From contig JAPDFW010000008.1 of the NCBI GenBank assembly GCA_028826165.1, positions 1-64,000 on the forward strand: a stretch of DNA of 64,000 nt, written 5' to 3'. The stretch comes from Anaeramoeba ignava BMAN (Eukaryota > Protista > Anaeramoebae). Numbering within the stretch: position 1 is the stretch's first letter; each line of letters opens with the position of its first letter. Below, piece after piece: positions 3,340 to 60,458 of the stretch. A program made the translations under genes and the position numbers. Below the pieces are notes generated by a model, which ran no database searches, was not told the origin of the DNA, and was given only the letters and a program-made list of their open reading frames with translations.

Positions 3340-3572
3340 TTTTGAAAAGAAAAAAAAATGAAAAAATGATTTTTGGAATTTTAATTTTAATTTTAATTTT
3401 AATTTTAATTTTAATTTAAATTTTAATTTTAATTTAAATTTTAATTTTAATTTTAATTTTAATTTTAATTTTAATTTTAATTTTAATTTTAATTTTAATT
3501 TTAATTTTAATTTTAATTTTAATTTTAATTTTAAATTTGATTTTAATTTTAATTTTAATTTTAATTTTAATT

Positions 3573-5351: not shown

Positions 5352-5564
5352 TTTTGAAAAAGAAAAAAATGAAAAAAATGAAAAAAATGAAATTTTGGAA
5401 TTTTAATTTTAATTTTAATTTTGATTTTAATTTTAATTTTAATTTTAATTTTAATTTTAATTTTAATTTTAATTTTAATTTTATTTTTAATTTTAATTTT
5501 AATTTTAATTTTAATTTTAATTTTTATTTTGTTTTTAATTTTAATTTTAATTTTGATTTTAATT

Positions 5565-7397
5565 TTAATTTTGATTATTAAATTTGTTAATTAATAAATC
5601 AAATAAATTTGGATTTGTTTCATTTAATTGAAAATAATCAATTCCAATTTGAATTTCATTAATTATTTCTTTTGTAATTTGAATTTCATCTTTAATTTGA
5701 TTTGAATAAATCCAATATTCAAATATTTGAAATGATTTATTACTTAATTCACTATAATCTGTAACTTTATTTGAAGTATCATTTGTTACAGATAAAAACA
5801 TTCCTCGATATAATTCACTTCTCATTATTAATATTAATTTTGGAAATTTATATTGTTTTTCTTTTCTTTCAATAATAAAATCTTTTTCATTTTCATTTTC
5901 ATTTAAATAAATTCTTTTCATTGTTTCTTCAATTTTTTCATTTGAATTTATAATTTCTTTAATTTCAGAATATAATTTTGGATTTATTATTTTGTTTGAA
6001 TAAATCATTTCAAATATTTGATTTGATTCTTTAATTGATTTATTTGAAATAATTTCTTGAAGTTTTTCAATTTGGTTTTCATTTTGATTTTGATTTAATC
6101 TATATTTCAATATTAATTTATGAGCTTCAATTATTTCTTCATTTTCTGTTTTAAATGAAATATTACAAAATTCTTTTCTTTCAAATAATTTTATCAAATC
6201 TTCTTCGAGATTGGAAAAAGAAGGAGGAGAATAATAAAGGAATGAATTGTAAACTCCACAAAGAACATGATAATTGGAAATATCTTCATTAAATCTTAAT
6301 TTAGGAAGTTCAATTTGAATTGGAATTGGTTGATTATTTGTATCTCCAATTCCTAATTGACCATAATCATTATCTCCAAATGATATCATTTTCCCTTTGT
6401 AAGTTAAAATCAAACTATGGTAATCACCACAAGAAAAATCAAGAATATCATCATCATTTTCAAATAAAGATGATTTGATTTCAGTAAATTCATCAATAAT
6501 TTCATTTTTACTTTTGATAAGTCCATTATATTCATAACCTCCACATGAATAAAGTTTTCTTTTTGGATTTTGATTTTGATTTTGATTTTCATTTTCAATC
6601 AACATTATTGAATGCCAACCTCCACATTGAATATCAATTATTTTACCTTTTGGAATATTTTGGATTTTGGTTAATTTTTGGATTCCATCTTCTTTTCTTC
6701 TTGATTCTCCTAATCCAAGTTGTCCATATGCATTAAATCCGCATCCAAATAATTCTTGATTTGAATTTAGAAGAAAAACATATCTTGAAGAATTTCCTGA
6801 AAATATTTTAGAAACATTTTTCATTATTAAAATTGGTTTTTCTGTTTTTGGAAGTGTTTTAGAATCTAAACCAAGTTGACCAAAATAATTATCTCCAATT
6901 CCATAAGCATTTTGATTTGAAGTTAATAAGTAAATTGAATATTCTCCACAAACAATATCTTGAATTATTCTATCATTTGTATCTTCAATTAATGATGAAA
7001 TATTGATAAATTCTTTTGGATTATTTGGATTAATATCTCCTCCTTTTGCAAATACATTTCCTTCTTTTGTTAAAATAGCTTCAATATCATCACCAACAGT
7101 TACTTTTTGAATATTTTCTTCAATTTGGATTTTTTTAGGATTTTGTTTTGAACCTTCTAAATATTCTATTGCTTTTCCATTTTTAAAAAGGAAAATTATT
7201 GAAGTATTTCCTGATGAAATTTGTTTAATTTGTTTTTCATTTTCATTTTCATTTTCATTTTCATTTTCATTTTCATTTTCATTTTCATTTTCATTTTCAT
7301 TTTCAAATTTAAATTGAATTGGTTTTGTTATTTCTTCTGGTTCATTTTTGAAAAGAACTGGAAATTCATTTCTTCCAAAAAATATAATTTCATTCAT
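5565..7397 (-). CDS. RCC1-repeat + BTB protein (intronless)
   Basis: 610-aa ORF, tandem paralogue. Confidence 0.92.
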   Translation of the reverse strand: MNEIIFFGRNEFPVLFKNEPEEITKPIQFKFENENENENENENENENENENENEKQIKQISSGNTSIIFLFKNGKAIEYLEGSKQNPKKIQIEENIQKVTVGDDIEAILTKEGNVFAKGGDINPNNPKEFINISSLIEDTNDRIIQDIVCGEYSIYLLTSNQNAYGIGDNYFGQLGLDSKTLPKTEKPILIMKNVSKIFSGNSSRYVFLLNSNQELFGCGFNAYGQLGLGESRRKEDGIQKLTKIQNIPKGKIIDIQCGGWHSIMLIENENQNQNQNPKRKLYSCGGYEYNGLIKSKNEIIDEFTEIKSSLFENDDDILDFSCGDYHSLILTYKGKMISFGDNDYGQLGIGDTNNQPIPIQIELPKLRFNEDISNYHVLCGVYNSFLYYSPPSFSNLEEDLIKLFERKEFCNISFKTENEEIIEAHKLILKYRLNQNQNENQIEKLQEIISNKSIKESNQIFEMIYSNKIINPKLYSEIKEIINSNEKIEETMKRIYLNENENEKDFIIERKEKQYKFPKLILIMRSELYRGMFLSVTNDTSNKVTDYSELSNKSFQIFEYWIYSNQIKDEIQITKEIINEIQIGIDYFQLNETNPNLFDLLINKFNNQN

Positions 7398-7648
7398 TTT
7401 TTGAAAAGAAAAAAAATGAAAAAATGATTTTTGGAATTTTAATTTTAATTTTAATTTTAATTTTAATTTAAATTTTAATTTTAATTTTAATTTTAATTTT
7501 AATTTTAATTTTAATTTTAATTTTAATTTTCATTTTAATTTTAATTTTAATTTTAATTTTAATTTTAATTTTAATTTTAATTTTAATTTTAATTTTAATT
7601 TTAATTTTAATTTTGATTTTGATTTTGATTTTAATTTTAATTTTAATT

Positions 7649-9508
7649 TTAATTATTAAATTTGTTAATTAATAAATCAAATAAATTTGGATTTGTTTGA
7701 TTTAATTGAAAATAATCAATTCCTCTTTCCATTTCATCAATAATTTCTTGTGTAATTTCAATTTCATCTTTAATTTGATTTGAATAAATCCAATATTCAA
7801 ATATTTGAAATGATTTATTACTTAATTCACTATAATCTGTAACTTTATTAGAAGTATCATTTGTTACAGATAAAAACATTCCTCGATATAATTCACTTCT
7901 CATTATTAATATTAATTTAGGAAATTTATATTGTTTTTCTTTTCTTTCAATAATAAAATCTTTTTCATTTTCATTTTCATTTAAATAAATTCTTTTCATT
8001 GTTTCTTCAATTTTTTCATTGGAATTTATAATTTCTTTAATTTCACAATATAATTTTGGATTTATTATTTTGTTTGAATAAATCATTTCAAATATTTGAT
8101 TTGATTCTTTAATTGATTTAGTTGAAATAATTTCTTGAAGTTTTTCAATTTGGTTTTCATTTTGATTTTGATTTAATCTATATTTTAATATTAATTTATG
8201 AGCTTCAATTATTTCTCCATTTTCTGTTTTAAATGAAATATCACAAAATTCTTTTCTTTCAAATAATTTTATCAAATCTTCTTCAAGATTGGAAAAAGAA
8301 GGAGGAGAATAATAAAGAAATGATCTTTGAAATCCACAAAGAACATGATAATTGGAAATATCTTCATTAAATCTTAATTTAGGAAGTTCAATTTGAATTG
8401 GAATTGATTGATTAATTGTATTTCCAATTCCTAATTGACCAGACGAATTATTACCAAATCCTATCATCTTTGAATTGGAAGTTAAAATCAAACTATGTGC
8501 ATTTCCAACAGAAATTTCAAGAATATTATCATTATCATTTTCAAATAAAGATGATTTGATTTCAGTAAATTCATAAGTATCTTTATCATATTTGCCAAGT
8601 CCATTTAAATTATAAGCGCCACATGAATAAAGTTTTCTTTTTGGATTTTGATTTTCATTTTCAATCAACATTATTGAATAAGCAAATCCACATTGAATAT
8701 CAATTATTTTGCCTTTTGGAATATTTTGGATTTTGGTTAATTTTTTGATATTTGTTTCTCTTCTTGTTTCTTCTAATCCAAGTTGATCATATAAATTATA
8801 TCCGCATCCAAATAATTTTTGATTTGAATTTAAAAGAAAAACATGAGCCGAAGTATTTCCTGAAAATATTTTAGAAACATTTTTCATTATTAAAATTGGT
8901 TTTTCTGTTTTTTTAAGTGTTTCAGAATCAAAACCAAGTTGACCATAATAATTTGAACCAATTCCATAAGCATTTTGATTTGAAGTTAATAAGTAAATTG
9001 AATTTCTTCCACAAACAACATCTTTAATTATTCTATCATTTGTATCTTCAATTAATGATGAAATATTGATAAATTCATTTAAATTTTTTGAATTAGTATC
9101 ATATCCTTTGGCAAATACATTTCCTTCTTTTGTTAAAATAGCTTCATTTTTCCAGCCAACAGTTACTTTTTGAATATTTTCTTCAATTTGGATTTTTTTA
9201 GGATTTTGATTTGAATAATATTCATTTAAATATTCTATTGCTTTTCCATTTTTAAAAAGGAAAATTGTTGAAAAATCTCCTGTTGAAATTTGTTTAATTT
9301 GTTTTTCATTTTCATTTTCATTTTCATTTTCATTTCCATTTTCATTTCCATTTTCATTTTCATTTTCATTTTCATTTTCATTTTCATTTTCATTTTCATT
9401 TTCATTTTCATTTTCAAATTTAAATTGAATTGGTTTTGTTATTTTATTTGTTTCATTTTTGATAAGTTTTGGTTTTTTATTTTTACCAAAAAATATAATT
9501 TCATTCAT
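7649..9508 (-). CDS. RCC1-repeat + BTB protein (intronless)
   Basis: 619-aa ORF, tandem paralogue closest to 1534-3339. Confidence 0.92.
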   Translation of the reverse strand: MNEIIFFGKNKKPKLIKNETNKITKPIQFKFENENENENENENENENENENENGNENGNENENENENEKQIKQISTGDFSTIFLFKNGKAIEYLNEYYSNQNPKKIQIEENIQKVTVGWKNEAILTKEGNVFAKGYDTNSKNLNEFINISSLIEDTNDRIIKDVVCGRNSIYLLTSNQNAYGIGSNYYGQLGFDSETLKKTEKPILIMKNVSKIFSGNTSAHVFLLNSNQKLFGCGYNLYDQLGLEETRRETNIKKLTKIQNIPKGKIIDIQCGFAYSIMLIENENQNPKRKLYSCGAYNLNGLGKYDKDTYEFTEIKSSLFENDNDNILEISVGNAHSLILTSNSKMIGFGNNSSGQLGIGNTINQSIPIQIELPKLRFNEDISNYHVLCGFQRSFLYYSPPSFSNLEEDLIKLFERKEFCDISFKTENGEIIEAHKLILKYRLNQNQNENQIEKLQEIISTKSIKESNQIFEMIYSNKIINPKLYCEIKEIINSNEKIEETMKRIYLNENENEKDFIIERKEKQYKFPKLILIMRSELYRGMFLSVTNDTSNKVTDYSELSNKSFQIFEYWIYSNQIKDEIEITQEIIDEMERGIDYFQLNQTNPNLFDLLINKFNN

Positions 9509-19364: not shown

Positions 19365-21890
19365 TTATTTTATTCCACTTTTTCTTTTTTTTTGGAATTT
19401 AATTTAATTTAATTTGATTTGATTTAATTTAATTTGAATTTGATTTAATTTAATTTAATTTGATTTGATTTGATTTAATTTAATTTAATTTGATTTGATT
19501 TAATTTAATTTAATTTGAATTTAATTTAATTTAATTTGATTTGATTTAATTTAATTTAATTTAATTTAATTTTGATTTGATTTGAATTTTATTCCACTTT
19601 TTTTATTGGTTTTGGAATTTAATTTAATTTAAATTGATTTAATTTAATTTAATTTGATTTGAAATAAATTTTATTCCACTTTTTTTATTGGTTTTGGAAT
19701 TTAATTTGATTTGATTTGATTTGATTTAATTTGATTTAATTTGAATTAATTTAATTTGATTTAATTTGATTTAATTTAATTTGATTTAATTTAAAATAAA
19801 TTTTATTCCACTTTTTTTATTGGTTTTGGAATTTAATTTAATTTAATTTAATTTAATTTGATTTGAATTTAATTTGATTTAATTTGAAATAAATTTTATT
19901 CCACTTTTTTTATTGGTTTTGGAATTTAATTTAATTTGATTTAATTGAATTTGATTTAATTTAATTTAATTTAATTTAATTTAATTTAATTTTATTTAAT
20001 TTAATTTGATTTAATTTGATTTGATTTAATTTAATTTAATTTACACCTTTTCAACTTTGGTTTAAACCTTTTGCAAAAATATTTAAACCTTTTGCAAAAA
20101 TATTTAAACCTTTTGCAAAAATATTTAAACCTTTTGCAAAAATATTTAAACCTTTTGCAAAAATTTTAAACCTTTTTTTTTATTTAAACCCTTGACTTTT
20201 GAAAGTTTCATCTAAACTTTTATTTTTCTTTTTTGAAAAAAATTTGGAAGATGATGAAAAAGATTGTGAATTGAAAATGAGAATACAAAATCTCAATTCA
20301 TTTTGATTTTCAAAAATCAAGAATATATTCTTTGTTCAAAGTTTTGGGAATAATATTCCTACTGATATATGATAATCAATTTGGGGATTTCTCCAGAGTT
20401 CTTGTTAACTTTCTTTGATCAAATCAAGCAGAGATTATTGATTTGTGAATTGTTGAAAAGCAACACAATTTTTCACTGTTAAATAAACATTTTCACCACG
20501 ATTAAGAAAAGGAGAATAAGATGAAAGAAAATGTATAGAAGGGAGAAGTTGTTCCAATATTTCTGTGGTCATATTAGAGTGATGAAAATATAACATTATA
20601 AGAGATAAATTTAAAGCCTTCATCTTTAAGTAATACATGAAAACAATATGGTAAAAAGTCAATAAAGTCAATAGAATTAAATGCACCAATTTGAATCTTG
20701 GATTGAATTAATCCAAAATTTGGTTCACTTTCATCTCTTTGAGATTGTATCATTATTTGGAAGAAAAAATAAAAATTAGATATCTTCAAAAAAAAATTCA
20801 ACCTGTTATTTATTGAGAGTCAAAAAAGTTGAAACCAAATACTGAAATCGACAAGGGTTTAAATTAAAAAAAAAGGTTTAAATATTTTTGTAAAAGGTTT
20901 AAATATTTTTGCAAAAGGTTTAAATATTTTTGCAAAAGGTTTAAATATTTTTGCAAAAGGTTTAAATATTTTTGCAAAAGGTTTAAACCAAAGTTGAAAA
21001 GGTGTAATTTGATTTAATTTAATTTAATTTGAATTAATTTGATTTAATTTAATTTAATTTGATTTAATTTAATTTAATTTGAATTAATTTGATTTAATTT
21101 GAATTAATTTGAATTTATTTAATTTGATTTGATTTAATTTGATTTAATTTAATTTGATTTAATTTAATTTGATTTAATTTAATTTAATTTGATTTGATTT
21201 AATTTGATTTGATTTAATTTGATTTAATTTGATTTAATTTAATTTAATTTGATTTAATTTGATTTAATTTGAAATAAATTTTATTCCACTTTTTTTATTG
21301 GTTTTGGAATTTAATTTGATTTAATTTGAATTTGATTTGATTTAATTTAATTTAATTTGATTTAATTTAATTTGATTTAATTTGATTTAATTTAATTTAA
21401 TTTAATTTAATTTAATTTGATTTAATTTGATTTGATTTAATTTAATTTGATTTGATTTGATTTGATTTGATTTGATTTGATTTAATTTGATTTAATTTTA
21501 TTTAATTTAATTTGATTTAATTTGATTTGATTTAATTTGATTTGATTTAATTTAATTTGATTTAATTTAATTTGATTTAATTTAATTTGATTTTTATTTA
21601 ATTTTGATTTAATTTGAAATAAATTTTATTCCACTTTTTTTATTGGTTTTGAATTTAATTGAATTTGATTTGATTTGATTTAATTTAATTTAATTTAATT
21701 TAATTTGATTTAATTGAATTTAATTTGAAATAAATTTTATTCCACTTTTTTTATTGGTTTTGGAATTTAATTTAATTTGATTTGATTTAATTTGATTTAA
21801 TTTAATTTAATTTGATTTAATTTGATTTAATTGAATTTAATTTAAAATAAATTTTATTCCACTTTTTTTATTGGTTTTTTTTTTAAATTT
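19365..21890. repeat. Array of about 9 copies of a ~40-bp unit (AAATAAATTTTATTCCACTTTTTTTATTGGTTTTGGAATTT) separated by variable (AATTT/GATTT)n tracts; interrupted by a transposon
   Basis: Unit cores near 19372, 19591, 19673, 19805, 19898, 21283, 21628, 21739, 21856. Confidence 0.85.
20044..21004 (-). mobile_element. Non-autonomous, decayed Tc1/mariner-IS630 DNA transposon with ~150-bp TIRs
   Basis: Ends CACCTTTTCAACTTTGGTTTAAACC and GGTTTAAACCAAAGTTGAAAAGGTG; TA on both flanks; five 21-bp subrepeats per TIR; internal frameshifted transposase remnant (YNVIFHH...FLSSYSPFLNRGENV). Confidence 0.88.
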
Positions 21891-22426
21891 TTTTTTTTTG
21901 GAATTTTGATCTATCTTTTTTTTCTTAAATAATTTGATATTTTATTTTGGAAAATATTTAAATTATTAATAAAATAAAGAATAAGAAAAAAATATTAATT
22001 TGCTTTTTAATTTTTATTAACTAAAAAAAAAAACAAGAAAAAGGAAAAAAAGCAAAAAAGAAAAAAGAAGAAAAATTTTTTAAAAGGAGAATAATTTTAT
22101 TTTTTTAATTAAAAATTTTTTTTTTCTTTTTAATTTAATTTAATTTAATTTAATTTGATTTAATTTAATTTGATTTGATTTAATTTGAGGGCATAAATGA
22201 TCTTTTTTTTTTTAAAAAAAATTAAATTAAATTAAAATTAAAATTAAAAAAATAAGGAAAAAATTAAATTAAAAAATAAAAACAAAAAAAATTTTTTTTC
22301 TTTTTTTTCTTTTTTAATTTTTTTTTTAATTTAAAAGTTTTCATTTTTTATCACACACAAAAACTTTTTTTTTTTTAATAAAAAAAAACAAATCAAAAAA
22401 AAAAACAAAACTAAACAAAAAAAAAG

Positions 22427-29065: not shown

Positions 29066-29346
29066 TAAATTTTTTAAAAATTATAAATTAAAAAAATGAA
29101 AAAAAAAAATTAAAAAATTTTGTTTTTTGTTTTTTGTTTTTTTGTTTTTTTTTAATTAAAATGTGTTTTCTTTTTGTTTTTTTCTTTTGGTTTTCTTTTA
29201 AAAAAAATGAAAAGAAAAAAAAAATTTTTTTGTTGTTGAAAGAAAAAAAGAAAAAAAGAAAAAAAAAAACAAAATTCGAAATCCAAAAAGAAAAAAAATC
29301 AAAGAGCATCAAAAAATTAAAACGGACGAAAAACGCTCATCAATTT

Positions 29347-30465
29347 CTACTTTTTCAAATTAACTTTTTTCATGTAAGTTTTATTAGTTTTTGGAGGACC
29401 AGCAGCTACAGCTTTAACAATTTGTGCGAATAATTCATCAATATTTTCCACTTTAGCAGTGCTAACCTCAACATAAGTTGAACAGCCTAATTGTTTAGCA
29501 ACCAATTTTGCCTATAATGTGTTTTTGTAAAACAAGTTAACAATCCAGTAAGAGATTAATCAATTACTATTAAAAAATGATTTTCAAAAGAAAAAATACA
29601 TCTTTTGATGAAACTAAATCGGTTTGTGTATTGCTTTCTCTTAATTCAGATTGGGTTCCAACAAGAACACATCTGGGATTTTGTTTCCATTTCGCTTGTG
29701 TAAGATATTGCACGTGGGGATACCACTAAAACAAGTTTTTGATAAAGATAAATTTTGCAAAAAAAAATTTTGATCAACGCTTACAAGATTTTCAATGTTT
29801 GTAAAAGTGTCACGATTTCCAACAGAAAATACAAGAAGCCAAACTTGGTCCGGTGAGAACAGATATTGTGAAACTAAAAGCTCTTGGCCTTCGCGTGGTT
29901 TGCCTGTCTCAACTAAGTTGTATTTCGGTGTCAAAGTGTTCATGTAAAAAATTGATTGTTTGTTTTTTAAAAAAAGTTAGAATTGGATTCAATTTGTTTT
30001 TCGTGTTTTGTTCGTTATGTTGTGTACTTATTCCTGCAATCGCAAGGGTATCTTCAATGTGAACTTTGTATTTTTTTGATTTCACTTCAACTTCTTTTTC
30101 TCCATGAACTTCCATTGGTACACATTTACTTGGAAATTCTCCTGTTAATAGAGTAGCGGCTAATGCATTAGCCTCTAAAAAGAAGGAAAAGATTTTAATA
30201 TTGATTTCAATATTAAAATGAATATTGAACGAAATTTTAGATTAAAAAATTTTTTTAATTTAATTTTTTTAATTTAATTTTTTTAATTTAATTTTTTATT
30301 TTAATTTTTTATTTTATTTTTTTAATTTAATTTAATTTTTTAATTTAATTTAATTTTATTTTTTAATTTAATTTTACCATTATTATGTGTTGCATCATGT
30401 GTGTTTTCATTTGAAAGTGTTAGTAAATTAAAATTTCCTATTGTAATCACATGAATATCTGACAT
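29347..30465 (-). CDS. Divergent Rho-family small-GTPase-like protein lacking the P-loop (5 exons)
   Basis: TGEFPSKCVP, YKVHIEDT, LLVFSVGNRDTFTNIENLWYPHV, CVLVGTQSELR, AKQLGCSTYVEVSTAKVENIDELF; GxxxxGK(S/T) absent. Confidence 0.75.
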
Positions 30466-30609: not shown

Positions 30610-33600
30610 ATGGAAAAATTATATGATTTTTTAAATCGGAATATGAGATTTGAACAAGCTTATCAACAATCTCAAGTTAAAAAGAATGAAAAAGATGAAG
30701 TAAAATTAAATAAAAATAAATAAAAATTCTTAATTAAAAATTTAAAACAAAAAAAAAAAAGGATGTAAAATTATTTTTTAAAAGCAATTTATTATTTTAT
30801 TATTATTTTATTATTAATTATTATTAAAAATAGAATAAAACTATTTTACATTTAGCTTGTGAATATAATTCTATTGATATTGTAAACAAACTTATTGAAG
30901 ATGGTGCTTCTTTAACAATTAAAGATAATGTATATATCATAATTATAATTATAATTCAAATCTCAAATTTAAATTCCAAATTTAAAATTAAATTAGTTTG
31001 TAATTTAATAATATTTTTTTTGGATTAATTAGGAAATTATTAAATATATTTATTAAAATTAAATTAGGGAGATACACCTTTACATACTGCATGTGCATAT
31101 GGATATGATAAAATAGCAAAAACATTAATTACAAAAGGAGCACCATTAACATTACAAAACAAAGTTAATTTTCCTTTTTTTTTTTATCAAAAAAAAATAT
31201 TTGATTAATTTATTCCAATTTAAACATTTTTATTCCAATTTATAGATTGTAAATACAAATACAAATATAAATATAAATATAAATATAAATATAAATATAA
31301 ATATAAAAATAAATATAAATATAAATATAAATATAAATATAAATATAAATACAAATATAAATATAAATATAAATATAAATAAATATAAATATAAATATAA
31401 ATATAAATATAAATATAAATATAAATATAAATATAAATATAAATATAAATATAAATATAAATATAAATATAAATATAAATATAAATATAAATATAAATAT
31501 AAATATAAATATAAATATAAATATAAATATAAATATAAATATAAATATAAATATAAATATAAATATAAATATAAATATAAATATAAATATTTATAAATAT
31601 AAATATTCCAAATTCCAAATTAAAATAATAACAAGGGAATGACTCCATTACATAATGCTTGTTGGGGTGGATTTTTCAAAATTGTTAAATTAATTGTTAA
31701 AAAATCAACAGAAATTGATCAAAAAAATAAAGTATTCTTTCATTTATTCTTTTATTTATTTATTTATTTATTTATTAATTAATAATAAATTATATATAGA
31801 AAGTAAAATATTTATTTAGAATAAATATTTTTTTTAATAAATTAATAATAAATTAATTAAATATATATTAAAAGGGAAATACTGCACTTCAAATTTCATG
31901 TTTTAAAGGATTTGGAAATATTACAAAATATCTTTTATCAAAACCAATATTCTTAGATAATCAAAATGATGTAACTTTCCTAAAATTAAAATCAAAATCA
32001 AAATCAAAATCAAATTCAAAATCAAATTCAAAATTAAATTCAAAATCAAAATTTAATATATTAGACTGTAAATAAAAATATAAATAAAATGTTTTTTTTC
32101 CTTAAAATTTATAAATCAAAAAAACAATTATTATTATTATTATTATTTATTATTATTATTATTTAAATAAAATCTTTTTAAAAGGGAAGAACAGCACTTC
32201 ATTTAGCTTGTGTATCTAAAAATCCACAAATTGTTGAAGAATTATTAAATTCAGGTGCAAATCCAAATATTAAAGATCATGTAAAAATAATCAAATTAAA
32301 TTAAATTAAATTAAATCAAATCCAATTAAATCAAATTAAATCAAATTAAATTAAATTAAATTAAACAATTAAATTAAATTACATCAAATTATCAAATTAA
32401 ATATTTTTTTAAATTATTTATTTTAATAGAAAGTAATTCAAAAAACAAAAAAAAAAAAATAATTAATATTAAATAATAATAAATAATAAATCCAAAATAG
32501 GGATTTTTACCGCTTCATATTGCATCTGGAAATGGATCAATAAAAATTGTTGAACATTTAATTAATCATAAAGCAAATGTTAATTTAAAAAATGATGTAA
32601 AATTAAATAAAAATTAAAATTAATAAAAATTAAAAATAAAAATTTAATTTTGGAAAATTTGAATTTATTATAAAAGTTTGTAAAAATTTATTAATTAATT
32701 AATAAATAAATAAATGAATTAAATATTTAGAAAATTAATAATCATATTTTATATTATATTTTATTTAAATAAATGTAAATTCTTTCTCTTTATTTTTATT
32801 TTTTATTTATTAATATTTCTTCATCCATTTTTTTGGAAAAATTAAAATTAAAATTAAAATTAAAATTTAAAAATAAATTAGAAAGAAACACCATTATTAT
32901 ATGCAATTCAAGAAGGAAATATTGAAATTGTTAAATTACTTTTAGAAAATCATTCAAATGTTAATCCAACAGATAATGTATTTATTATTATTTATTATTT
33001 ATTATTTATTATTTATTATTTATTTTAATAAAAAACAAAAACAATTTTAATAAAATTATAGATTGTAAAGATTAAAAAATAAAATCAAATTAAATCAATT
33101 TATTAATTTATTCATTTAAAAAAATAAAAAGCAAACACCACTTCAATTTGCAATAACAAATAATCATTTTGAAGTTATTAAAGAATTAATTAGATATGGA
33201 GCAGATGTTAATAAATCAAATGATGAAGTAAATTCAAAAAATAATTCAAAAAATAATTCAAAAAATAATTCAAAATGATTATTTAGACTGTAAATTAAAA
33301 AGAGAAGAAAAAAAGAAAAGAAGAAGAAATATATTAATATTAATAATAATTAAATAGGGATGTTCAAATATTCATTTAGCATGTGTACAAGGAAATCATG
33401 AAACAGTGAAATTACTTCTCAAAGCAAAAGCAAATCCAAATGATTTAGATATTGTAATCAAAACAAATTAAAATTAATTAAAATTAATTAAAATTAACAA
33501 TAATAATTTAGAATGTAAAATAAATTAATATTCATTTTGAATTAACATGATTTAATATTAATATTAATATTATTATTATTATTACATTTATATTTTCAAA

Positions 33601-36151
33601 ATTTTATAAAAAAAGGGATCTACACCATTACATTCAGCATCAGAAAATGGATATTTTCTTATTATTCGAGTATTACTTGAAAAAGGAGCTGAAATTGATA
33701 TAAAAAATAAAGTTTGATTTGAAATCAAAATATTAATTTAATTTAATTTAATTTAATTTAATTTAAATATTTTATTTTGGTTTTTTTTTAGGAAGTAAAA
33801 ATAAATAAAAATAAAAATAAAAAAAATATTTATTATTATTTTATAAATGAAAAAAAGGGAAAAACAGCACTTCATTTAGCATGTGAAAATGGAAGAATAA
33901 GATCTGTTATTGAACTTTCTAAATTATGGAGCAAATATTAATTTAACTTGCAATGTATATTATTTATTTTATATTTATTCATTTTAAATTTATTTTATAT
34001 TTGAAAAAATAATAAACAAAATAAATAGTTTGTATTTAATTATTTATTTAATAATTAATATCAAAATTAAATTTTAAATTTTAAATAAAAAAAAATAATT
34101 AGAATGTATTTTAATTTTTATTAAAATTAAATTAATTTAAATTTAAAATAAAATATTTATTTATATTTATATTTATATAGGGAGTTTGATTCAATTTAAT
34201 AAATAAATAAATAAATAAATAAAATAATCCTTATTATTTTCCAAATTATTTTCCAAATTATTAGAAAGTAAATGAAAAATCCAAAAAATATAAATATAAA
34301 TAATATAAATATAAATATAAATATAAATAATATAAATATAAATATAAATATAAAAATATTAGGAATGTGATCCACTTACAATTGCTGAAGAAAAGAAATA
34401 TTCTGAAGTAGTACATATACTTAAGAAATATATAAATGGAGAAGATTATTCTTACGTTTTAAGTGAATCACAAGATTTTATAGAAATTGAAAAACTATTA
34501 CAAGAAAGTATCAAGAAAAAAGAAGAAGAAGAAGAAAAAGAAAAAGAAAAAGAAAAAGAATCTCATAAAAAAAAAAGAAAAGCAAAAAGATCCAAAAAAA
34601 AACAAATTGAAAATCAAATTGAAATTGAAAATGAAATTGAAAATGAAAATGAAAATCAAATTGAAAATGAAAATGAAAATGAAACAACAGAAAATGAAAC
34701 AACAGAAAATGAAACAACAGAAACAGAAACAGATATTGAAAATGAAAATGATGATGATGATGATGATGAAAAACTAATTGATTTAACTTCAGCATTAATA
34801 TTTAAACCATCATTGATAAAAGAAAATCCAACAAATAATGAAAACATTAATGTAGAAATAAGTGAAAAAAAAGAACCAATTAATAATTTATCCGAAAATA
34901 CAATTTCTGAAAATGGTATTAACTTAAATCTTATTAAGGCAAGAGAAAATTTAAGAAGTTTTTTAAGTTCAAAAGATCAAAAACTTGCCAAAATTCGAAC
35001 AATTAAAAAGAATTTTAATGAACAAGGATTGAGTCTTATTGAAAATATTTTAATTCAAAAAAAGCAAAGTATTGAAAAAGAAAAAGAAAAAGAAAATCAA
35101 AATGAAAAAGAAAAATCAAAATCAAAATCAAAATCAAAATCAAAATCAAAATCAAAATCAAAATCAAAAACCAGATAATAAATTAACTGATACAGATAAA
35201 TTCAGAGAACAATTTAGCTTAACATCAAAAGATAGATTATTAGAATTTGATCCAAATTCATTAACAGATGTACAAAAAATAGGAGAAGGAGCATATGGAA
35301 CTGTATTTAAAGCAAAAATGGATGAAATTGATGTTGCGATTAAATATTTCAAATTCAAATTACAAAAGAAAGAAAGAGAAAGAGCAACATCAGAATTCAA
35401 AATTCTCAAATCATTAAATTATCCATTTATTGTTTCTTTTCTTGGATATAGTTTAAATCCATATTGTATTATGATGGAATTTTGTGATCAAGGAAGTTTA
35501 TCAGATTTAATTTATAATAACAAAATCGAATTTACTCAAGAAGAAATGTTTAAAATTTTCAAAGAAATCACATTTGCATTAATTTATCTTCATTCAAAAC
35601 AAATTATCCATCGAGATCTTAAAAGTCAAAATATATTAATTGATCAACATGGAAGAGTAAAATTAGCAGATTTCGGATTAGCAACATTTACAGACTCAGA
35701 AAAACAATTATCAGCTGTTGGAACACCTAATTGGACAGCACCAGAAGTTCTTCAACGATTAAAATATTCATATTCAGTAGATATTTTTTCAATTGGAATG
35801 ATTATTTATGAAGTTACTCATAGAATAATTCCATTTGATAAACAAAATATTTTTGAAATTATGATGAATATTCAAAATGGAATTAGACCATCTTTAAAAG
35901 ATGATAATATTTTTAATGATATTATTGTTCAATGTTGGGCTCAAGATCCAAATGAAAGACCTACTGCTACAGAATTACTTACAATGTTGAGTGATTTAGA
36001 AACACAAACTAAAAATCAAAATCAAAATCAAAATCAAAATTCAAATCAAAATCAAAATCAAAATCAAAATCAAAATCAAAATCAAAATCAAAATCAAAAT
36101 CAAAATCAAAATCAAAATCAAAATCAAAATCAAAATCAAAATCAAAATTAA
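30610..36151 (+). CDS. Ankyrin-repeat (about 12) + TKL-family protein kinase; 28 predicted exons including 15 three-nt micro-exons; two +1 homopolymer frameshifts (about 33917 and 35113)
   Basis: Exon 1 30610-30699; 96-nt ankyrin exons starting at 30834, 31068, 31636, 31875, 32185, 32501, 32882, 33132, 33358, 33616 and 33858 (97 nt) encoding G.TPLH.A-type repeats; last exon from 34363; kinase motifs [32 protein letters not shown]. Confidence 0.88.
30762..34267 (+). other. Fifteen 3-nt micro-exons (AG|NNN|GT) in the ankyrin-kinase gene
   Basis: 30762 GAT, 30997 TTT, 31246 ATT, 31800 AAA, 32065 ACT, 32430 AAA, 32677 TTT, 33062 ATT, 33287 ACT, 33512 AAT, 33792 GAA, 34029 TTT, 34103 AAT, 34181 GGA, 34265 AAA. 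Confidence 0.85.
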
Positions 36152-36343
36152 AATTAAAATCAAAATCAAAATCAAAATTAAAATCAAAATCAAAATCAAA
36201 ATCAAAATCAAAATCAAAATCAAAATTAAAATCAAAATCAAAATCAAAATCAAAATTAAAATCAAAATCAAAATCAAAATCAAAATCAAAATTAAATTCA
36301 AAATATTTGTAAAATTTATTTGAAAAGAAAAAAAAAACAATCT

Positions 36344-38165
36344 TCAATTTTTATCAAGTAAATTAGTTTTAGGATCATCATTTTCATTAATTTCTTCATT
36401 TGGATTTTGTAATTGATTTTGAATTTTTGACATTTCTTCTTGAATTTGATTAATTTCGATTTGATTTCCACAATAACCTCCATTTAAAAAAAGTTCAGAA
36501 ACATAAAATAAATCATTATAATTAGCAAAAGATTTTAAATGAATTTTAGAAGGAGGAATTTTTGAAAATAATAAATGAATCCAATTTTTACAACAACCTT
36601 TTGAAAAAGGATTTTGAATATCTTTATAAATATTTCGATACTTTTTTTTTTGATAAAAATTCAAATAAATAAAATGAATAAATAAAATGAATAAAATTAA
36701 TTTCTTACATATTCTCTTGTTGTTAAATTTTTAGAAACTAAATAACAATGAAAAAAGGTTAATTTTGATAAATACATTGAAAAAGGAAGAGAATAAATTG
36801 TTAATAAATAACTATAGATTTTTTTAAAGAAAAAGAATTTGAATAATTTTTTGATAGTTTTGATTAAAATTAATAAAAAAAACCTTGCTAATGTTTTCAC
36901 AAATGCTTCAGAAAATGTTTTTTCTTTCGTAAGAATAATAATATGAAGAATTGAAACAACAAAAACAAAAAATATTGAAAGAGTTACAAAAATTAAGAAA
37001 AGAAAGAAAAATCTATAATTTCTTATTCCTAAATCACATCCAACCCATCCACCTTTTTTTTTTAAAAAAAATAACCAAAACATGAAAAGAAAGAAAAAAT
37101 TTAAAAATCGGATAAAAATTTTTTAAAAATCGGATAAAAATTTTTTTACAATGATGATCAAATTTTTGAACACAATTATCACAAATAGAACAATGAGAAG
37201 CACGAGGAGATCTATAAATATTGCAAGTATCTAAAAAATAAAAACAAATAAAATATTTATATTTTATATTTTGAATTTCTTTTTTTTTTTGAATTTTTAC
37301 CACAATAAGGTAATTCAAAAGTATTATTTTGAAATTCAAAAGGTTTTGTTTCAGGAATATGTTGAAAAGATCCCTAAAAATATAAAATATTAATATTAAA
37401 TATTAATATAAAATATTAAATAATAAAATATTAAATATAAATAATAAATATTAAATATAAAATAATAAATATTAATATTAAATATTAATATAAATATAAA
37501 TAATAAATATAAATATAAAATATAAAATATTAAATATAAAATATTAAATATTAAATATAAATATTAAATAATAAATATAAATATAAAATATAAATATTAA
37601 ATATTAAATAATAAATATAAATATTAAATATAAAATATTAAATATAAAATATTAAATATAAAAATATTAAATATATAAAAATATAAATATAAATATTAAA
37701 TATAAATAATAAATATTAAATATTAAATATTAAATATTAAATAATAAATATTAAATATTAAATATTAAATATTAAATATTAATATAAAATATTAATATGC
37801 ACTGAAAAATATGTATCACGAGGAATAATTCCAGGTTCAATAAAAGAAGTTAATAACAAAGAAAGATTAACAGCAATAAAAAGAAAAAGAGCAACCAAAA
37901 AAATAGAAAAATGGATAATTTTAATAGAAGGATAAGCAGTAAAAATAATAAATAAAATAAAAGGAATATTAAAGATAAATTCAGTAACAATTAAAGTTTT
38001 CCAATCAGGCCCAGTAAATAATTTTCCAGAACAACAAAACCTATTATTTCCTGGCCAAACTTGATAAATTTTTAATTTTGAATGAAGAGTATGATTTTGA
38101 TTTTGATTTTCAATTTGATTTTGATTAACAAATTCAAAATGTGTTTCAACTAAATTATTATTCAT
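36344..38165 (-). CDS. DHHC zinc-finger palmitoyltransferase (ZDHHC9/14/18, Erf2-like), multi-exon
   Basis: [74 protein letters not shown]. Confidence 0.93.
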
Positions 38166-38257
38166 TTAAAAAAAAAGAAAAAAAATGAAAAATAAAATTT
38201 TTTTTTGAAATATTTTTTTTCATTTTTTTTCATTTTTCTTACTTTCCAAAATTTTCA

Positions 38258-50646: not shown

Positions 50647-52472
50647 ATGAATGATTGTTTATTTTTTGGTCAAAATCAATATCCAAAACTTATCAAAAAT
50701 GAACCAAATAAAATAGCAAAACCAATTCAATTTAAATTTGAAAATGAAAATGAAAATGAAAATGAAAAACAAATTAAACAAATTTCATCAGCAAATTTTT
50801 CAACAATTTTCCTTTTTAAAAATGGAAAAGCAATAGAATATTTAAATGATAAAGATTCAAAACAAAAATCCTGAAAAATTCAAATTGAAGAAAATATTCA
50901 AAAAGTAACTGTTGGTTATCATAATGAAGCTATTTTAACAATAGAAGGAAATGTATTTTTGCAATTTTCCTTTTGAAAATGGGAGAATATAAAGATTCAA
51001 AACAAAAATATATTAACAAAAAATACAAAAGAATTTATCAATATTTCATCATTAATTGAAGATCCAAATGATAGAATAATTGAAGATATTGTTTCTGGTT
51101 ACAGTTCAATTTACTTATTAACTTCAAATCAAAATGTTTATGGAATTGGTTCAAATCAATATTGTCAACTTGGTTTTGATTTTAAAACACTTTATGAAAC
51201 AGAAAAACCAATTTTAATGATGAAAAATGTTTCTAAAATATTTTCAGGAAATACATCAGATTGCATTTTTCTTTTAAATTCAAATCAAGAATTATTTGGA
51301 TGCGGATATAATTATTCTGGTCAACTTGGATTAGGAGAATCAAGAAAAGAAGAAACAGAAATCCAAAAATTAACCAAAATCCAAAATATTCCAAAAGGCA
51401 AAATAATTGATATTCAATATGGAATTTCTTTTTCAATAATGTTGATTGAAAATCAAAACGAAAACCCAAAAAGAAAACTTTATTCATGTGGATATTATGG
51501 ATATAATGGACTTGGCAAAATACTTGAAAATACTTATGAATTTACTGAAATCAAATCATCTTTATTTGAAGATAATGATGATAATATTCTTGATTTTTCT
51601 GTTGGACATTCTCATACTTTGATTTTAACTTCTAAAGGGAAAGTAATTGGATTTGGAGATAATTATTATGGTCAATTAGGAACTGAAGATACAAATAATC
51701 AATCAATTCCAATTCAAATTGAACTTCCTAAATTAAGATTTAATGAAAATATTTCTAATTATCATGTTCTTTGTGGATCTTTAAAATCATTCCTTTATTC
51801 TTCTCCTTCTTTTTCCAATCTTGAAGAAGATTTGATAAAATTATTTAGAAGAAAAGAATTTTGTGATATTTCATTTAAAACAGAAAATGGAGAAATAATT
51901 GAAGCTCATAAATTAATATTGAAATATAGATTAAATCAAAATCAAAATCAAAATCAAAATGAAAAACTTCAAGAAATTATTTCAAAAAAATCAATTAAAG
52001 AATCAAATCAAATATTTGAAATGATTTATTCAAACAAAATTATAAATCCAAAATTATATTCTGAAATTAAAGAAATTATAAATTTAAATGAAAAAATTGA
52101 AGAAACAATGAAAAGAATTTATTTAAATGAAAATGAAAAAGATTTTATTATTGAAAGAAAAGAAAAACAGTATAAATTTCCCAAAATTAATATTAATAAT
52201 GAGAAGTGAATTATATCGAGGAATGTTTTTATCTGTAACTGAAGACAAATCTAAATAAAGTTACAGATTATAGTGAATTAAGTAATGAATCATTTCAAAT
52301 ATTTGAATATTGGATTTATTCAAATCAAATTAAAAATGAAATTGAAATTACACAAGAAATAATTGAAGAAATTAAAATTGGAATTGATTATTTTCAATTA
52401 AATCAAACAAATCCAAATTTATTTGATTTATTAATTAATAAATTTAATAACCAAAATCAAAATCAAAATTAA
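50647..52472 (+). pseudogene. RCC1-BTB paralogue with several frameshifts (pseudogene or poor consensus)
   Basis: Frameshifts near 50868, 52180 and 52252; scrambled segment at about 50955-51010; otherwise collinear with the paralogues. Confidence 0.7.
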
Positions 52473-52592
52473 AATCAAAATCAAAATCAAAATCAAAATC
52501 AAAATTAAAATCAAAATCAAAATCAAAATCAAAATCAAAATCAAAATTAAAATAAAAATTAAAATTTTTTTTTCATTTTTTTCTTTTTAAAA

Positions 52593-54579
52593 ATGAATGA
52601 AATTTTATTTTTTGGTCAAAATGAATATCCAAAACTTATCAAAAATAAATCAAAAGGAATAACAAAACCAATTCAATTTAAATTTGAAAATGAAAATGAA
52701 AATGAAAATGAAAATGAAAAAGAAAAAGAAAAATGAAAATGAAAATGAAAATGAAAAACAAATTAAACAAATTTCATCAGGAAACTTTTCAACAATTTTC
52801 CTTTTTAAAAATGGAAAAGCAATAGAATATTTAAGAGATTCAAATCAAAATCCTGAAAAAATTCAAATTGAAAATATTCAAAAAGTGTCTGTTGGTCATG
52901 AAAATGAAGCTATTTTAACATTAGAAGGAAATGTATTTGCAAAAGGAAAATATATTAATTCAAAAAATCCAAAAGAATTTATTAATATTTCATCATTAAT
53001 TGAAGATACAAATGATAGAGTAATTGAAGATATTGTTTCTGGTTACAGTTCAATTTACTTATTAACTTCAAATCAAAATGTTTATGGAATTGGTTCAAAT
53101 GGTTGGGGTCAACTTGGTTTGCATTATGAAACACTTCAAAGAACAGAAAAACCAATTTTAATGATGAAAAATATTTCTAAAATATTTTCAGGAAATACAT
53201 CAGATTGCATTTTTCTTTTAAATTCAAATCAAGAATTATTTGGATGCGGATATAATTATCATGGTCAACTTGGATTAAAAGAAGCAATACTACAGGCAAA
53301 AGTCTATAAATTAACTCAATTCCAAAATATTCCAAAAGGCAAAATAATTGATATTAAAGGTGGATTTAATCATTCAATAATGTTAATTGAAGATGAAGAT
53401 GAAAATGAAAATGAAAATGAAAATCCAAAAAGAAGACTTTATTCAACTGGAGATTATAAATCTAATGCACTTGGCAAGGCTCAAGATACAAAAATATTTA
53501 CTGAAATCAAATCACCTTTATTTGAAAATGATGAAGATAATATTCTTAAAATTTCTTGTGGACAATATCATAATTTGATTTTAACAACAAATGGGAAATT
53601 GATAGTATTTGGAAATAATGAATTTGGTCAATTAGGAACTGGAGATATAAACCATCAACCAACTCCAATTCAAATTGAACTTCCTAAATTAAGATTTAAT
53701 GAAAATATTTCCAATTATCATGTTTCTTGTGGAAATAATAAATCATTTCTTTATTATTCTCCTCATTCTTTTTCCAATCTTGAAGAAGATTTTATAAAAT
53801 TATTTGAAAGAAAAGAATTTTGTGATATTTCATTTAAAACAGAAAATGGAGAAATAATTGAAGCTCATAAATTAATATTGAAATATAGATTAAATCAAAA
53901 TCAAAATCAAATTGAAAAACTTCAAGAAATTATTTCAAAAAAATCAATTAAAGAATCAAATCAAATATTTGAAATGATTTATTCAAACAGAATTATAAAT
54001 CCAATATTATATTCAGAAATTAAAGAAATTATAAATTCAAATGAAAAAATAGAAGAAACAATGAAAAGAATTTATTTAAATGAAAATGAAAATGAAAATG
54101 AAAAAGATTTTATAATTGAAAGAGAAGAAAAACAATATAAATTTCCAAAATTAATATTAATAATGAGAAGTGAATTATATCGAGGAATGTTTTTATCTGT
54201 AACAGAAGACAAATCTAATAAAGTTACAGATTATAGTGAATTAAGTAATGAATCATTTCAAATATTTGAATATTGGATTTATTCAAATCAAATTAAAGAT
54301 GAAATTGAAATTACACAAGAAATAATTGAAGAAATTCAAATTGGAATTGATTATTTTCAATTAAATCAAACATATCCAAATTTATTTGATTTATTAATTA
54401 ATAAATTTAATAATCAAAATCAAAATCAAAATCAAAATCAAAATCAAAATCAAAATCAAAATCAAAATCAAAATCAAAATCAAAATCAAAATCAAAATCA
54501 AAATCAAAATCAAATTCAAATTCAAATTCAAAATCAAAATCAAAAAAAGAATAAAGAAAAAAATTGTTTAATTTTTTAA
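52593..54579 (+). CDS. RCC1-repeat + BTB protein; single frameshift in an A-run near 52730 (likely sequencing error)
   Basis: True start MNEILFFGQNEYPKLIKN at 52593 joins the 52684-54579 frame. Confidence 0.85.
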
Positions 54580-58717: not shown

Positions 58718-60349
58718 TTATTTATTTGAATTTTCAATTAAATGATTCATTCTTGGATTTAATTGGTAATAATCAATTATATCTTGAAAATCATTAATAA
58801 CTTCAATAGGTGTATCTGAATCAAATGTTCCAAAATACATTAACTTAATAATTGATTTAATTTCAACTGGTGTTCTGTTATTATAATCACTAACTTGATT
58901 TGAAGAATCTGTAACGCTGATAAACATTCCTCGAAATAAATCACTTCTAACAAGTAATATAAATTTATGAACTTTGATTTCTTCATTTTGACAAATAATT
59001 TTAAAATCTTTGGTTTCTTCTTCATAAAATAATTCACTAAAATCTTTTTCTAAATTATTTATTCCTCCAGTTTTTTCAATAATATTTTGGATTTTAAATT
59101 CTTCTTCAATTTCTCTTAAAATAAGATAATTTTTTGTTGTTCCAGTATAAATGAATTCTAAAAATTCTTGAATTTCTTTGATTGTTTTTGTTTCAAGAAA
59201 TTCTAATAACTTTTCAATTAAAATTTCATTTTTAATGCAAATTCTTTGTTCAATAAATATTTTATGAGCAGAAATAACTCCATCAATTCCTTTTATATTA
59301 ACATCAACTAAATCATTTAAAGATAAAGCACGTTGTAGATCTTCTTGAAGAACAGAAAAAGTAAGAGAAACTGAATAGATTATAGAATTACTTCTTCCTG
59401 TTTCAATCATTAAGTGTTTATGTTTATTATTGAGCTTTAAAGATTCTTTTTGTGGATATGGTTTATAATCTTTATCTGAATTTGGAAGATATAATTCTAA
59501 ATCTTCAGTTAATAAAGAAGCATCCCAACAACATCCAGAAACACAAGATACTCTTTTATCATTAAATCCTTCAACTTTTCTAAAACTTCCATTACTTGGT
59601 TGAAAAGTTCCACCTGCAATCCAAATTTCATGAAATCCTTTTTCGTTTTCAATAATTGCTATTGAATGTTGATATGAACAAGAAATCATTATTACTTTCT
59701 TATCACATAAATCAGGAACAAGTTGATAACCTTTAACAGATGATTTTGAATTAATTCCTAATTGTCCAGCTCCATTTCTTCCTGATGAGTAAAAATTTCC
59801 TGAAAAATCTTGAAAGAAAAAATGAAAAGCATAATCATCACTAAATACTCTTGAAACATTTTTAGAAACAAAAATAGGAATCCATATATTACTATCTCCA
59901 CTCACTCCAGTTTCACAATCAATATTATATCCACAACTATATAAATCGTTGTTTGAAGTAATGAAATAAGATTGATAACAACCACATGCAATATCTTTAA
60001 TAAAAATTTTTTTTTCAATAAAAAATTCAATTCTTTTTGGTGAATCAAGTGATTGACTTGAATTTCCATGACCTTGATGTCCATAAGTATTTCTTCCATA
60101 ACTATAAACTGTTCCATCAGATTTGAGAATCAAAAAATGTTCGAAACTTACTCGAGCTTTTACAACATCTTCAAGTGAAAGTTTTTTAATATTTTGATTT
60201 GATTCTTGATATTCATAAAGTTTTCCATTTGTTGTTGTTATCATTGTTCCTGGTGTTCCACTTGATATTTCTTTGATTTCTTCTTCAATATTAATATTTA
60301 AAGGTTTTATATCTGTTCCTTTATTTTGAAAAATCCAAAGTTCATTCAT
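58718..60349 (-). CDS. RCC1-repeat + BTB protein, second subfamily (intronless)
   Basis: 543 aa; YSYGRNTYGHQG, IACGCYQS, GRNGAGQLG; BTB KDFKIIC..EEIKVHKFILLVRSDLFRGMF. Confidence 0.92.
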   Translation of the reverse strand: MNELWIFQNKGTDIKPLNINIEEEIKEISSGTPGTMITTTNGKLYEYQESNQNIKKLSLEDVVKARVSFEHFLILKSDGTVYSYGRNTYGHQGHGNSSQSLDSPKRIEFFIEKKIFIKDIACGCYQSYFITSNNDLYSCGYNIDCETGVSGDSNIWIPIFVSKNVSRVFSDDYAFHFFFQDFSGNFYSSGRNGAGQLGINSKSSVKGYQLVPDLCDKKVIMISCSYQHSIAIIENEKGFHEIWIAGGTFQPSNGSFRKVEGFNDKRVSCVSGCCWDASLLTEDLELYLPNSDKDYKPYPQKESLKLNNKHKHLMIETGRSNSIIYSVSLTFSVLQEDLQRALSLNDLVDVNIKGIDGVISAHKIFIEQRICIKNEILIEKLLEFLETKTIKEIQEFLEFIYTGTTKNYLILREIEEEFKIQNIIEKTGGINNLEKDFSELFYEEETKDFKIICQNEEIKVHKFILLVRSDLFRGMFISVTDSSNQVSDYNNRTPVEIKSIIKLMYFGTFDSDTPIEVINDFQDIIDYYQLNPRMNHLIENSNK

Positions 60350-60458
60350 TTAAAAAAAATATGAAAAAAAATGAAAAAAATGAAAAAAATGAAAAAAATG
60401 ATTTTTGAATTTTAATTTTTATTTTTATTGAATTTATTTTGAATTTGAATTTTGATTA

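What the first reader, a model, noticed from the sequence alone, without database searches (positions are those of the whole stretch)
30610..34362. Ankyrin repeats assembled from 96-nt exons plus single-codon (3-nt) micro-exons at the variable beta-hairpin position
Seen: every interval between ankyrin exons contains an isolated AG|NNN|GT in otherwise almost G-free intron DNA, splitting it into two ordinary introns (mostly about 60-200 nt). There are 15 such triplets, encoding D,F,I,K,T,K,F,I,T,N,E,F,N,G,K. The large exons are 32 codons in phase 0, so one extra codon restores the canonical 33-residue repeat (e.g. IKDN|F|GDTPLH, QNK|I|GMTPLH, QND|T|GRTALH, LDI|N|GSTPLH, KNK|E|GKTALH). None of the triplets is a stop codon despite the AT-rich context, and I saw no such motif in the G-alpha or 14-3-3 introns. 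Known: this D-x-x-G-x-TPLH hairpin position lies on the ankyrin ligand-binding surface and is among those randomised in designed ankyrin repeat proteins. Inference: a systematic one-codon-exon gene architecture that gene predictors would miss. Because all exons are symmetric phase 0, skipping or shuffling could diversify the binding surface of a receptor-like kinase.
Basis: partly seen in the sequence, partly recalled or inferred. Interest (0 to 1): 0.95.

Follow-up and report, generated by a model that had tools for sequence, protein, structure and literature searches.

The report
Single-codon exons in amoeba ankyrin genes
The anaerobic amoeba Anaeramoeba ignava appears to spell the variable binding-loop residues of its ankyrin proteins, and stretches of other proteins, with exons only one codon long, probably a thousand or more of them, which the public annotation missed in the one gene I could check; RNA confirmation is still lacking.

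Summary
Observation confirmed, and larger than reported. The window (Anaeramoeba ignava) holds an ankyrin-kinase gene with 15 AG|NNN|GT triplets. The eight 96-nt exons tested match Pfam Ank positions 2-33 of 33, so the triplet supplies the missing residue. Other ankyrin loci mostly use TWO tandem triplets, for both x of D-x-x-G. Triplet number equals the residues the ankyrin register needs at 69/83 junctions. 148 triplets contain no stop (16.5 expected), and other lengths are nearly absent. Genome-wide there are 997 tandem 3-nt pairs versus 29 (4-nt) and 33 (6-nt), including chains of 10+ that do not look like ankyrin. A paralog conserves the four-triplet run (FNGK/FNSK). Best reading: constitutive one-codon exons spliced by intron definition. 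Skipping or shuffling for diversity and 'receptor-like' are unsupported. The one NCBI model checked omits the triplets. I found no paper describing this. Other first-stage readers of this scan noted the same architecture elsewhere in this genome.

The parts
30610..30699 (+). first coding exon, 90 nt (ATG to ...KDE)
30762..30764 (+). 3-nt exon GAT (D)
30834..30929 (+). ankyrin exon 1, 96 nt
   Evidence: Pfam Ank 3-33
30997..30999 (+). 3-nt exon TTT (F)
31068..31163 (+). ankyrin exon 2, 96 nt
   Evidence: Pfam Ank 2-33
31246..31248 (+). 3-nt exon ATT (I)
31636..31731 (+). ankyrin exon 3, 96 nt
31800..31802 (+). 3-nt exon AAA (K)
31875..31970 (+). ankyrin exon 4, 96 nt
32065..32067 (+). 3-nt exon ACT (T)
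32185..32280 (+). ankyrin exon 5, 96 nt
32430..32432 (+). 3-nt exon AAA (K)
32501..32596 (+). ankyrin exon 6, 96 nt
32677..32679 (+). 3-nt exon TTT (F)
32882..32977 (+). ankyrin exon 7, 96 nt
33062..33064 (+). 3-nt exon ATT (I)
33132..33227 (+). ankyrin exon 8, 96 nt, shifted one residue (starts at position 3)
33287..33289 (+). 3-nt exon ACT (T)
33358..33453 (+). ankyrin exon 9, 96 nt
33512..33514 (+). 3-nt exon AAT (N)
33616..33711 (+). ankyrin exon 10, 96 nt
33792..33794 (+). 3-nt exon GAA (E)
33858..33954 (+). ankyrin exon 11, 97 nt; frame changes mid-exon (assembly indel or lesion)
34029..34267 (+). four consecutive 3-nt exons F (34029), N (34103), G (34181), K (34265); paralog L016 has F,N,S,K
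34363..35170 (+). last exon, 5' part: capping repeat plus low-complexity charged linker; frameshift in the AAAATC repeat at its end
35171..36151 (+). protein kinase domain (Pfam Pkinase / PK_Tyr_Ser-Thr; TKL-like by motifs, my inference) and QN tail to stop

Best explanation
The triplets are real, normally included spliceosomal exons of one codon. Each is flanked by two ordinary short AT-rich introns (median 68 nt, minimum 50). The spliceosome most likely recognises these across the intron and removes them one at a time, so the triplet is first joined to one neighbour and never has to be defined as a free exon. The mRNA then encodes normal 33-34-residue ankyrin repeats. In this kinase gene one hairpin residue per repeat comes from a triplet. 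In most other interrupted ankyrin genes of the genome both x of D-x-x-G do. SHOWN: the motif, its length specificity, codon-like content, fit to the protein register, genome-wide spread and conservation in a paralog. INFERRED: inclusion in mRNA; intron-definition splicing; an ancestral repeat unit with phase-0 introns after ankyrin positions 32, 33 and 1, spread by cassette duplication and trimmed by precise intron loss to give 93/96+3+3, 96+3 and 99+0 forms. Any benefit, such as freer evolution or recombination of the variable codons, is speculative; neutral intron accumulation would also fit.
For: Eight of eight exons tested align to Pfam Ank from position 2 or 3 to 32/33, leaving position 1 for the triplet. 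A profile trained only on intronless ankyrins of this genome predicts 0, 1 or 2 missing residues, matching the triplet count at 69/83 junctions; several misses are second triplets that my regex overlooked. In L003 four triplets fill exactly positions 33,1,2,3 (D|R|K|K|E|TP). The 99-nt exons in L013 mostly have none. 148 triplets contain 0 stops versus 16.5 expected, with G at codon position 1 29 times versus 6 at position 3. Gap length scales with triplet number: medians 69/158/212/330 nt for 0/1/2/4. Triplet splice sites are stronger than those of large exons (GTA 96% vs 76%, TAG 76% vs 57%). Genome-wide, triplet + intron + ankyrin start gives 80 hits versus 0 with 4 nt and 0 reversed. FNGK/FNSK is conserved between paralogs. 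An A. flamelloides homolog has the same acceptor position and an uninterrupted N-K-E-G hairpin.
Against: The one public model checked joins large exons without the triplets at four junctions and misreads the other two; this is expected of a predictor but is not support. The window gene has two frameshifts in the assembly and could be a pseudogene, although similar indels occur in several other fetched genes. 14/83 junctions do not fit by the automatic count. No triplets were found in the only A. flamelloides locus examined.
Confidence: 0.8

Rival explanations
1. The triplets are real exons but are alternatively skipped or chosen (mutually exclusive in runs such as F|N|G|K), generating isoforms with different binding loops, like schistosome micro-exon genes or Dscam.
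For: All are symmetric phase 0 and sit at the variable binding position. The register needs only one residue where the window has four. Between paralogs the single triplets are 0/9 identical while the exons remain alignable. Arrays on G000:C1 have near-identical introns with varied codons.
Against: Triplet number normally equals the structural need, so skipping would shorten the hairpin. F,N,x,K is conserved in identity and order. In L003 all four are needed for register. Triplet splice sites are strong. The window gene and L016 are colinear, with best matches 1-1, 2-2, 4-4, 8-8, 10-10, so no shuffling is seen.
Confidence: 0.14
2. The triplets are not translated: they are relics or recursive-splicing way-points inside single long introns, or the genes are decayed copies.
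For: The public model omits them; there are frameshifts in the assembly; no RNA evidence.
Against: This does not explain the absence of stops, the codon-position asymmetry, the strict length of 3 (AG-GT with 0 nt is not enriched), the register rule or the conserved FNxK. Repeats would be 31-32 residues, whereas intronless ankyrins here are spaced at about 33 or multiples.
Confidence: 0.05
3. Chance motif or microsatellite artefact in very AT-rich DNA.
For: A few genome-wide pattern hits are plain satellites (C36, C46); the reversed control for the single motif is high.
Against: 148 versus 0-3 for other lengths; 997 versus 29 and 33 tandem pairs; adjacent ankyrin introns are no more alike than random pairs.
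Confidence: 0.01

Closest known systems
Animal and plant microexons (e.g. the conserved three-base exon of MAP4K5, PMC8632122; 1-15-nt plant microexons, PMC8831610)
   Same: Exons of 3 nt exist, are often unannotated, and constitutive ones have stronger splice sites.
   Different: There they are scattered exons (2,398 of all sizes up to 15 nt over 10 plant species; 9 nt commonest). Here the length is almost exclusively 3 nt, the exons are tied to a fixed position of a repeat family, and they occur in chains of 2 to 10 or more, on the order of a thousand in a 43-Mb genome.
Schistosoma micro-exon genes (MEG; PMC10526429)
   Same: Runs of very short exons, mostly multiples of three.
   Different: MEG exons are mostly 15 nt (6-81; 3-81 in the abstract) with introns up to 5 kb, about 35 genes, secreted and alternatively spliced. 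Here: one codon, about 68-nt introns, inside folded cytosolic domains, apparently constitutive.
Tetrahymena 90-bp-exon LRR genes (PMC6564038)
   Same: One exon per protein repeat, uniform intron phase, expansion in a protist.
   Different: There a single exon encodes the whole repeat (phase 2). Here the repeat is split into a large exon plus separate one-codon exons for the variable residues (phase 0).
Ankyrin-repeat kinases of the TKL group (own knowledge: ILK, TNNI3K, plant ANK-Raf-like kinases)
   Same: N-terminal ankyrin repeats and a C-terminal kinase, with no transmembrane segment.
   Different: The protein type is ordinary; orthology was not tested. The novelty lies in the gene structure.

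Membership tests
Spliceosomal microexon | Flanked by AG and GT with introns of normal size on both sides | tested here: met
   255 introns, minimum 50, median 68 nt
Spliceosomal microexon | Present in mature mRNA | not testable with these tools
Spliceosomal microexon | Under coding constraint | tested here: met
   0 stops in 148, register rule, FNxK conserved
Schistosome-type MEG | Most of the coding sequence in micro-exons with long introns; secreted protein | tested here: not met
   15 codons of about 1000; short introns; no hydrophobic leader
Schistosome-type MEG | Isoform diversity by exon skipping | not testable with these tools
   needs RNA; indirect evidence is against it
Ankyrin repeat (PF00023) | 33-residue repeat matching the profile | tested here: met
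   eight exons above the curated cut-off, exon by exon
Receptor-like kinase | Signal peptide and transmembrane helix | tested here: not met
   maximum 19-residue hydropathy -1.1, 0.5 and 1.2 in exon 1, linker and kinase
Exon-shuffled repeat array (Tetrahymena LRR type) | Recent duplicated or reordered exons | tested here: inconclusive
   the window gene is colinear with its paralog and introns are unrelated; near-duplicate exons are seen at C101

The most novel reading that the evidence does not exclude
A. ignava has a general one-codon-per-exon gene architecture: a thousand or more 3-nt exons, including chains of ten to dozens that spell peptides codon by codon. It is produced by an active process that copies introns to neighbouring codon boundaries (near-identical introns separate unrelated sense codons at G000:C1:409-413 kb), and in some arrays it is used for combinatorial choice of single residues at binding surfaces.
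Probability: 0.3. Interest if true: 0.97.

Novelty: new variant of a known kind. Interest (0 to 1): 0.86.

Why it matters
It would be the most extreme routine use of minimal exons that I could find. It shows that a spliceosome can assemble coding sequence one codon at a time in long chains, and it gives a natural system for testing the lower limit of exon size, splicing order and intron definition. The same intron positions recur in present/absent states, and young arrays carry near-identical introns, so mechanisms of intron gain and precise loss become directly testable. In practice, many A. ignava protein models may lack exactly the residues that determine ankyrin binding specificity, and the same blind spot may hide such exons in other intron-rich protists.

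Tried and rejected
I did not trim or resend it. The fetch from genomes stopped after 20 loci, so about 35 more ankyrin loci and the C1/C2 arrays were not fetched; I did not try to get them another way and describe them only from the rows the pattern searches printed. The kinase search of representatives returned only multi-kinase proteins. Homolog searches found no A. flamelloides ankyrin-kinase ortholog (length limits apply). The metagenome pattern scan gave six hits; the five whose sequence I could read in the output are chance matches. My first register regex was unreliable and was replaced by a profile. Local intron duplication as the origin in ankyrin genes: no signal left. Literature searches for ankyrin microexons, single-codon exons and Anaeramoeba exon structure found no report. 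An earlier count said 12 large exons; the right number is 11.
Full report
SOURCE. The window is contig C10 of a 42.8-Mb, 147-contig eukaryotic assembly. A long exon from another contig matched at 100% an NCBI protein of Anaeramoeba ignava, an anaerobic metamonad amoeba whose genome is 80.65% and introns 91.86% A+T (PMC11550330).

THE OBSERVATION. All 15 triplets are at the stated places with the stated codons. The gene reads: a 90-nt first exon, eleven ankyrin exons (ten of 96 nt, one of 97), fifteen 3-nt exons, and a long last exon with a capping repeat, a charged linker and a kinase domain. The 27 introns are GT-AG, 58-387 nt and nearly G-free. The last interval has four triplets (F, N, G, K). 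The frame breaks twice, in exon 33858-33954 and in an AAAATC repeat before the kinase. Similar indels occur in several other fetched genes, so assembly error is likely but unproven. No piece tested has a hydrophobic segment, so this is a cytosolic ankyrin kinase rather than a receptor-like one.

MORE THAN CHANCE. Eight exons scanned separately all exceed the Pfam Ank cut-off and align from profile position 2 or 3 to 32 or 33 of 33; position 1 is what the triplet supplies. A genome-wide pattern for triplet, intron and ankyrin start gave 80 hits at about 55 loci, none reversed and none with 4 nt in place of 3. By my count at least 65 of the first 79 ankyrin acceptors listed have such a triplet upstream. 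Tandem pairs of motifs number 997 for 3 nt, 29 for 4 nt and 33 for 6 nt, the latter two mostly microsatellites; three in a row give 390, some of them satellites.

THE GENERAL ARCHITECTURE. In 20 fetched loci the usual form differs from the window's: a large exon begins at the G of G-x-T-P-L-H and ends at the D/N, and TWO single-codon exons supply both x of D-x-x-G. The window gene and its paralog L016 use 96+3, with the first x fused to the upstream exon. Some junctions fuse the second x downstream, and 99-nt exons in L013 mostly have no triplet. Across 19 kb of inter-exon DNA there are 148 triplets and at most 3 motifs of any other length from 1 to 9. None is a stop, against 16.5 expected (P about 2e-8), and base use is codon-like. 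A profile trained only on intronless ankyrins of this genome predicts how many residues each junction lacks; this equals the triplet count at 69 of 83 junctions. In L003 four triplets fill exactly four missing positions. Gap medians are 69, 158, 212 and 330 nt for 0, 1, 2 and 4 triplets, that is about one 68-nt intron more per triplet, and triplet splice sites are stronger than those of the large exons. The paralog L016 is colinear, shares none of nine comparable single triplets, yet keeps F|N|S|K opposite F|N|G|K. An A. flamelloides ankyrin-BTB homolog has an acceptor at the same repeat position and an uninterrupted N-K-E-G hairpin, but shows no triplet.

BEYOND ANKYRINS. Rows printed by the pattern searches show long chains elsewhere; I read these by eye and could not fetch the loci, so their genes are unidentified. 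At G000:C2:8522-9208 (minus), just downstream of a kinase match, ten successive triplets with unrelated introns read K-T-G-W-D-S-G-F-Y-D. At C1:409308-413131 (minus), upstream of another kinase match, about 30 listed triplets are all sense codons ending in A or T, separated by near-identical introns of about 70-85 nt. Arrays at C1:942 kb and 1058-1073 kb may be read out of phase.

HOW IT MOST LIKELY WORKS (0.8). The triplets are constitutive exons. With short, self-contained introns the spliceosome can pair splice sites across each intron and remove them one at a time, so a 3-nt exon is always attached to a neighbour; skipping would need pairing across at least 116 nt. This step is inferred from general knowledge of short-intron splicing, not shown. 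The recurrence of the same three phase-0 positions in present/absent combinations suggests an old repeat unit with all three introns, cassette duplication and precise intron loss (inference). Adjacent ankyrin introns are no more similar than random pairs, so those are old, whereas the C1 array suggests recent local copying or homogenisation of introns. Rivals: regulated skipping or mutually exclusive choice (0.14; most plausible for F|N|G|K, where the register needs only one residue, and for the C1 arrays); untranslated relics (0.05); chance (0.01).

WHAT IS MISSING. The NCBI model P0151 for locus L004 joins large exons without the triplets at four junctions and misreads the other two. That is what a predictor would do, but it is formally the only public statement on the mRNA and it does not include them.

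COMPARISON AND NOVELTY. Single 3-nt exons are known (MAP4K5, PMC8632122), as are misannotated plant microexons (PMC8831610), schistosome micro-exon genes (PMC10526429) and one-repeat-per-exon LRR arrays in Tetrahymena (PMC6564038). Hairpin positions 2 and 3 of DxxGxTPLH are randomised in a designed ankyrin library (PMC4308713); the two-triplet genes isolate exactly those two codons. Keyword searches of the three Anaeramoeba genome papers found no mention of micro-exons, and wider searches found no systematic single-codon exon architecture; the library omits many subscription papers. It works like ordinary microexon splicing and fails the membership tests for MEG and for receptor kinase. I file it as a new, extreme variant of a known kind. 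Other first-stage readers noted the same thing in this genome; these are unchecked notes, not independent support.

VERDICT. Real, genome-wide, very probably coding, apparently unreported, and directly testable with existing RNA-seq. Interest 0.86.

Noticed in passing
G000:C2:7157-9208 (minus), rows: Chain of at least ten consecutive 3-nt exon candidates with unrelated introns reading KTGWDSGFYD, plus further triplets, downstream of a kinase match at C2:10208-10843.
   Followed up: partly
G000:C1:409308-413131 (minus): About 30 listed triplets, all sense codons, between near-identical introns, upstream of a kinase match at C1:407863; suggests recent intron copying or homogenisation.
   Followed up: partly
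G000:C1:942329-942797 and 1057922-1073176 (minus): Arrays of triplets rich in ATG/ATT/TTG with related introns; read one base out of phase a stretch gives W-A-N-F-D-D-D-D-F-Y, so some 3-nt exons may not be phase 0.
   Followed up: no
L014 oriented minus 3740-4135 (G000:C60 about 118.9-119.3 kb): Seven consecutive single-codon exon candidates (E,H,F,L,Y,Q,D) before an ankyrin exon.
   Followed up: partly
G000:C1:1796390, C25:13183, C28:3845, C57:9422: The same three-triplet cassette beginning with CCA, with similar introns, recurs on several contigs: a duplicated gene family.
   Followed up: no
window 1534-9508, 51217-54579, 58718-62087: Tandem intronless RCC1-BTB genes (RCC1 and BTB confirmed for 58718-60346); an expanded family.
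   Followed up: partly
window 19380-21900: AT-rich satellite with a recurring longer unit, and an inverted pair of tandem repeats around 20040-20190 and 20860-21000 that flank a small ORF (20435-20689, minus); possibly a mobile element.
   Followed up: no
window 29100-30400 (minus) and 36340-38170 (minus): Neighbours of the gene: a head-to-head intron-containing gene that looks like a small GTPase by eye (no Pfam hit on the piece tested) and a convergent DHHC palmitoyltransferase; neither has triplets.
   Followed up: partly
L004 / P0151: Ankyrin-coiled coil-kinase-HECT fusion protein named only as a kinase in NCBI; many other triplet-bearing genes are ankyrin-BTB fusions.
   Followed up: partly
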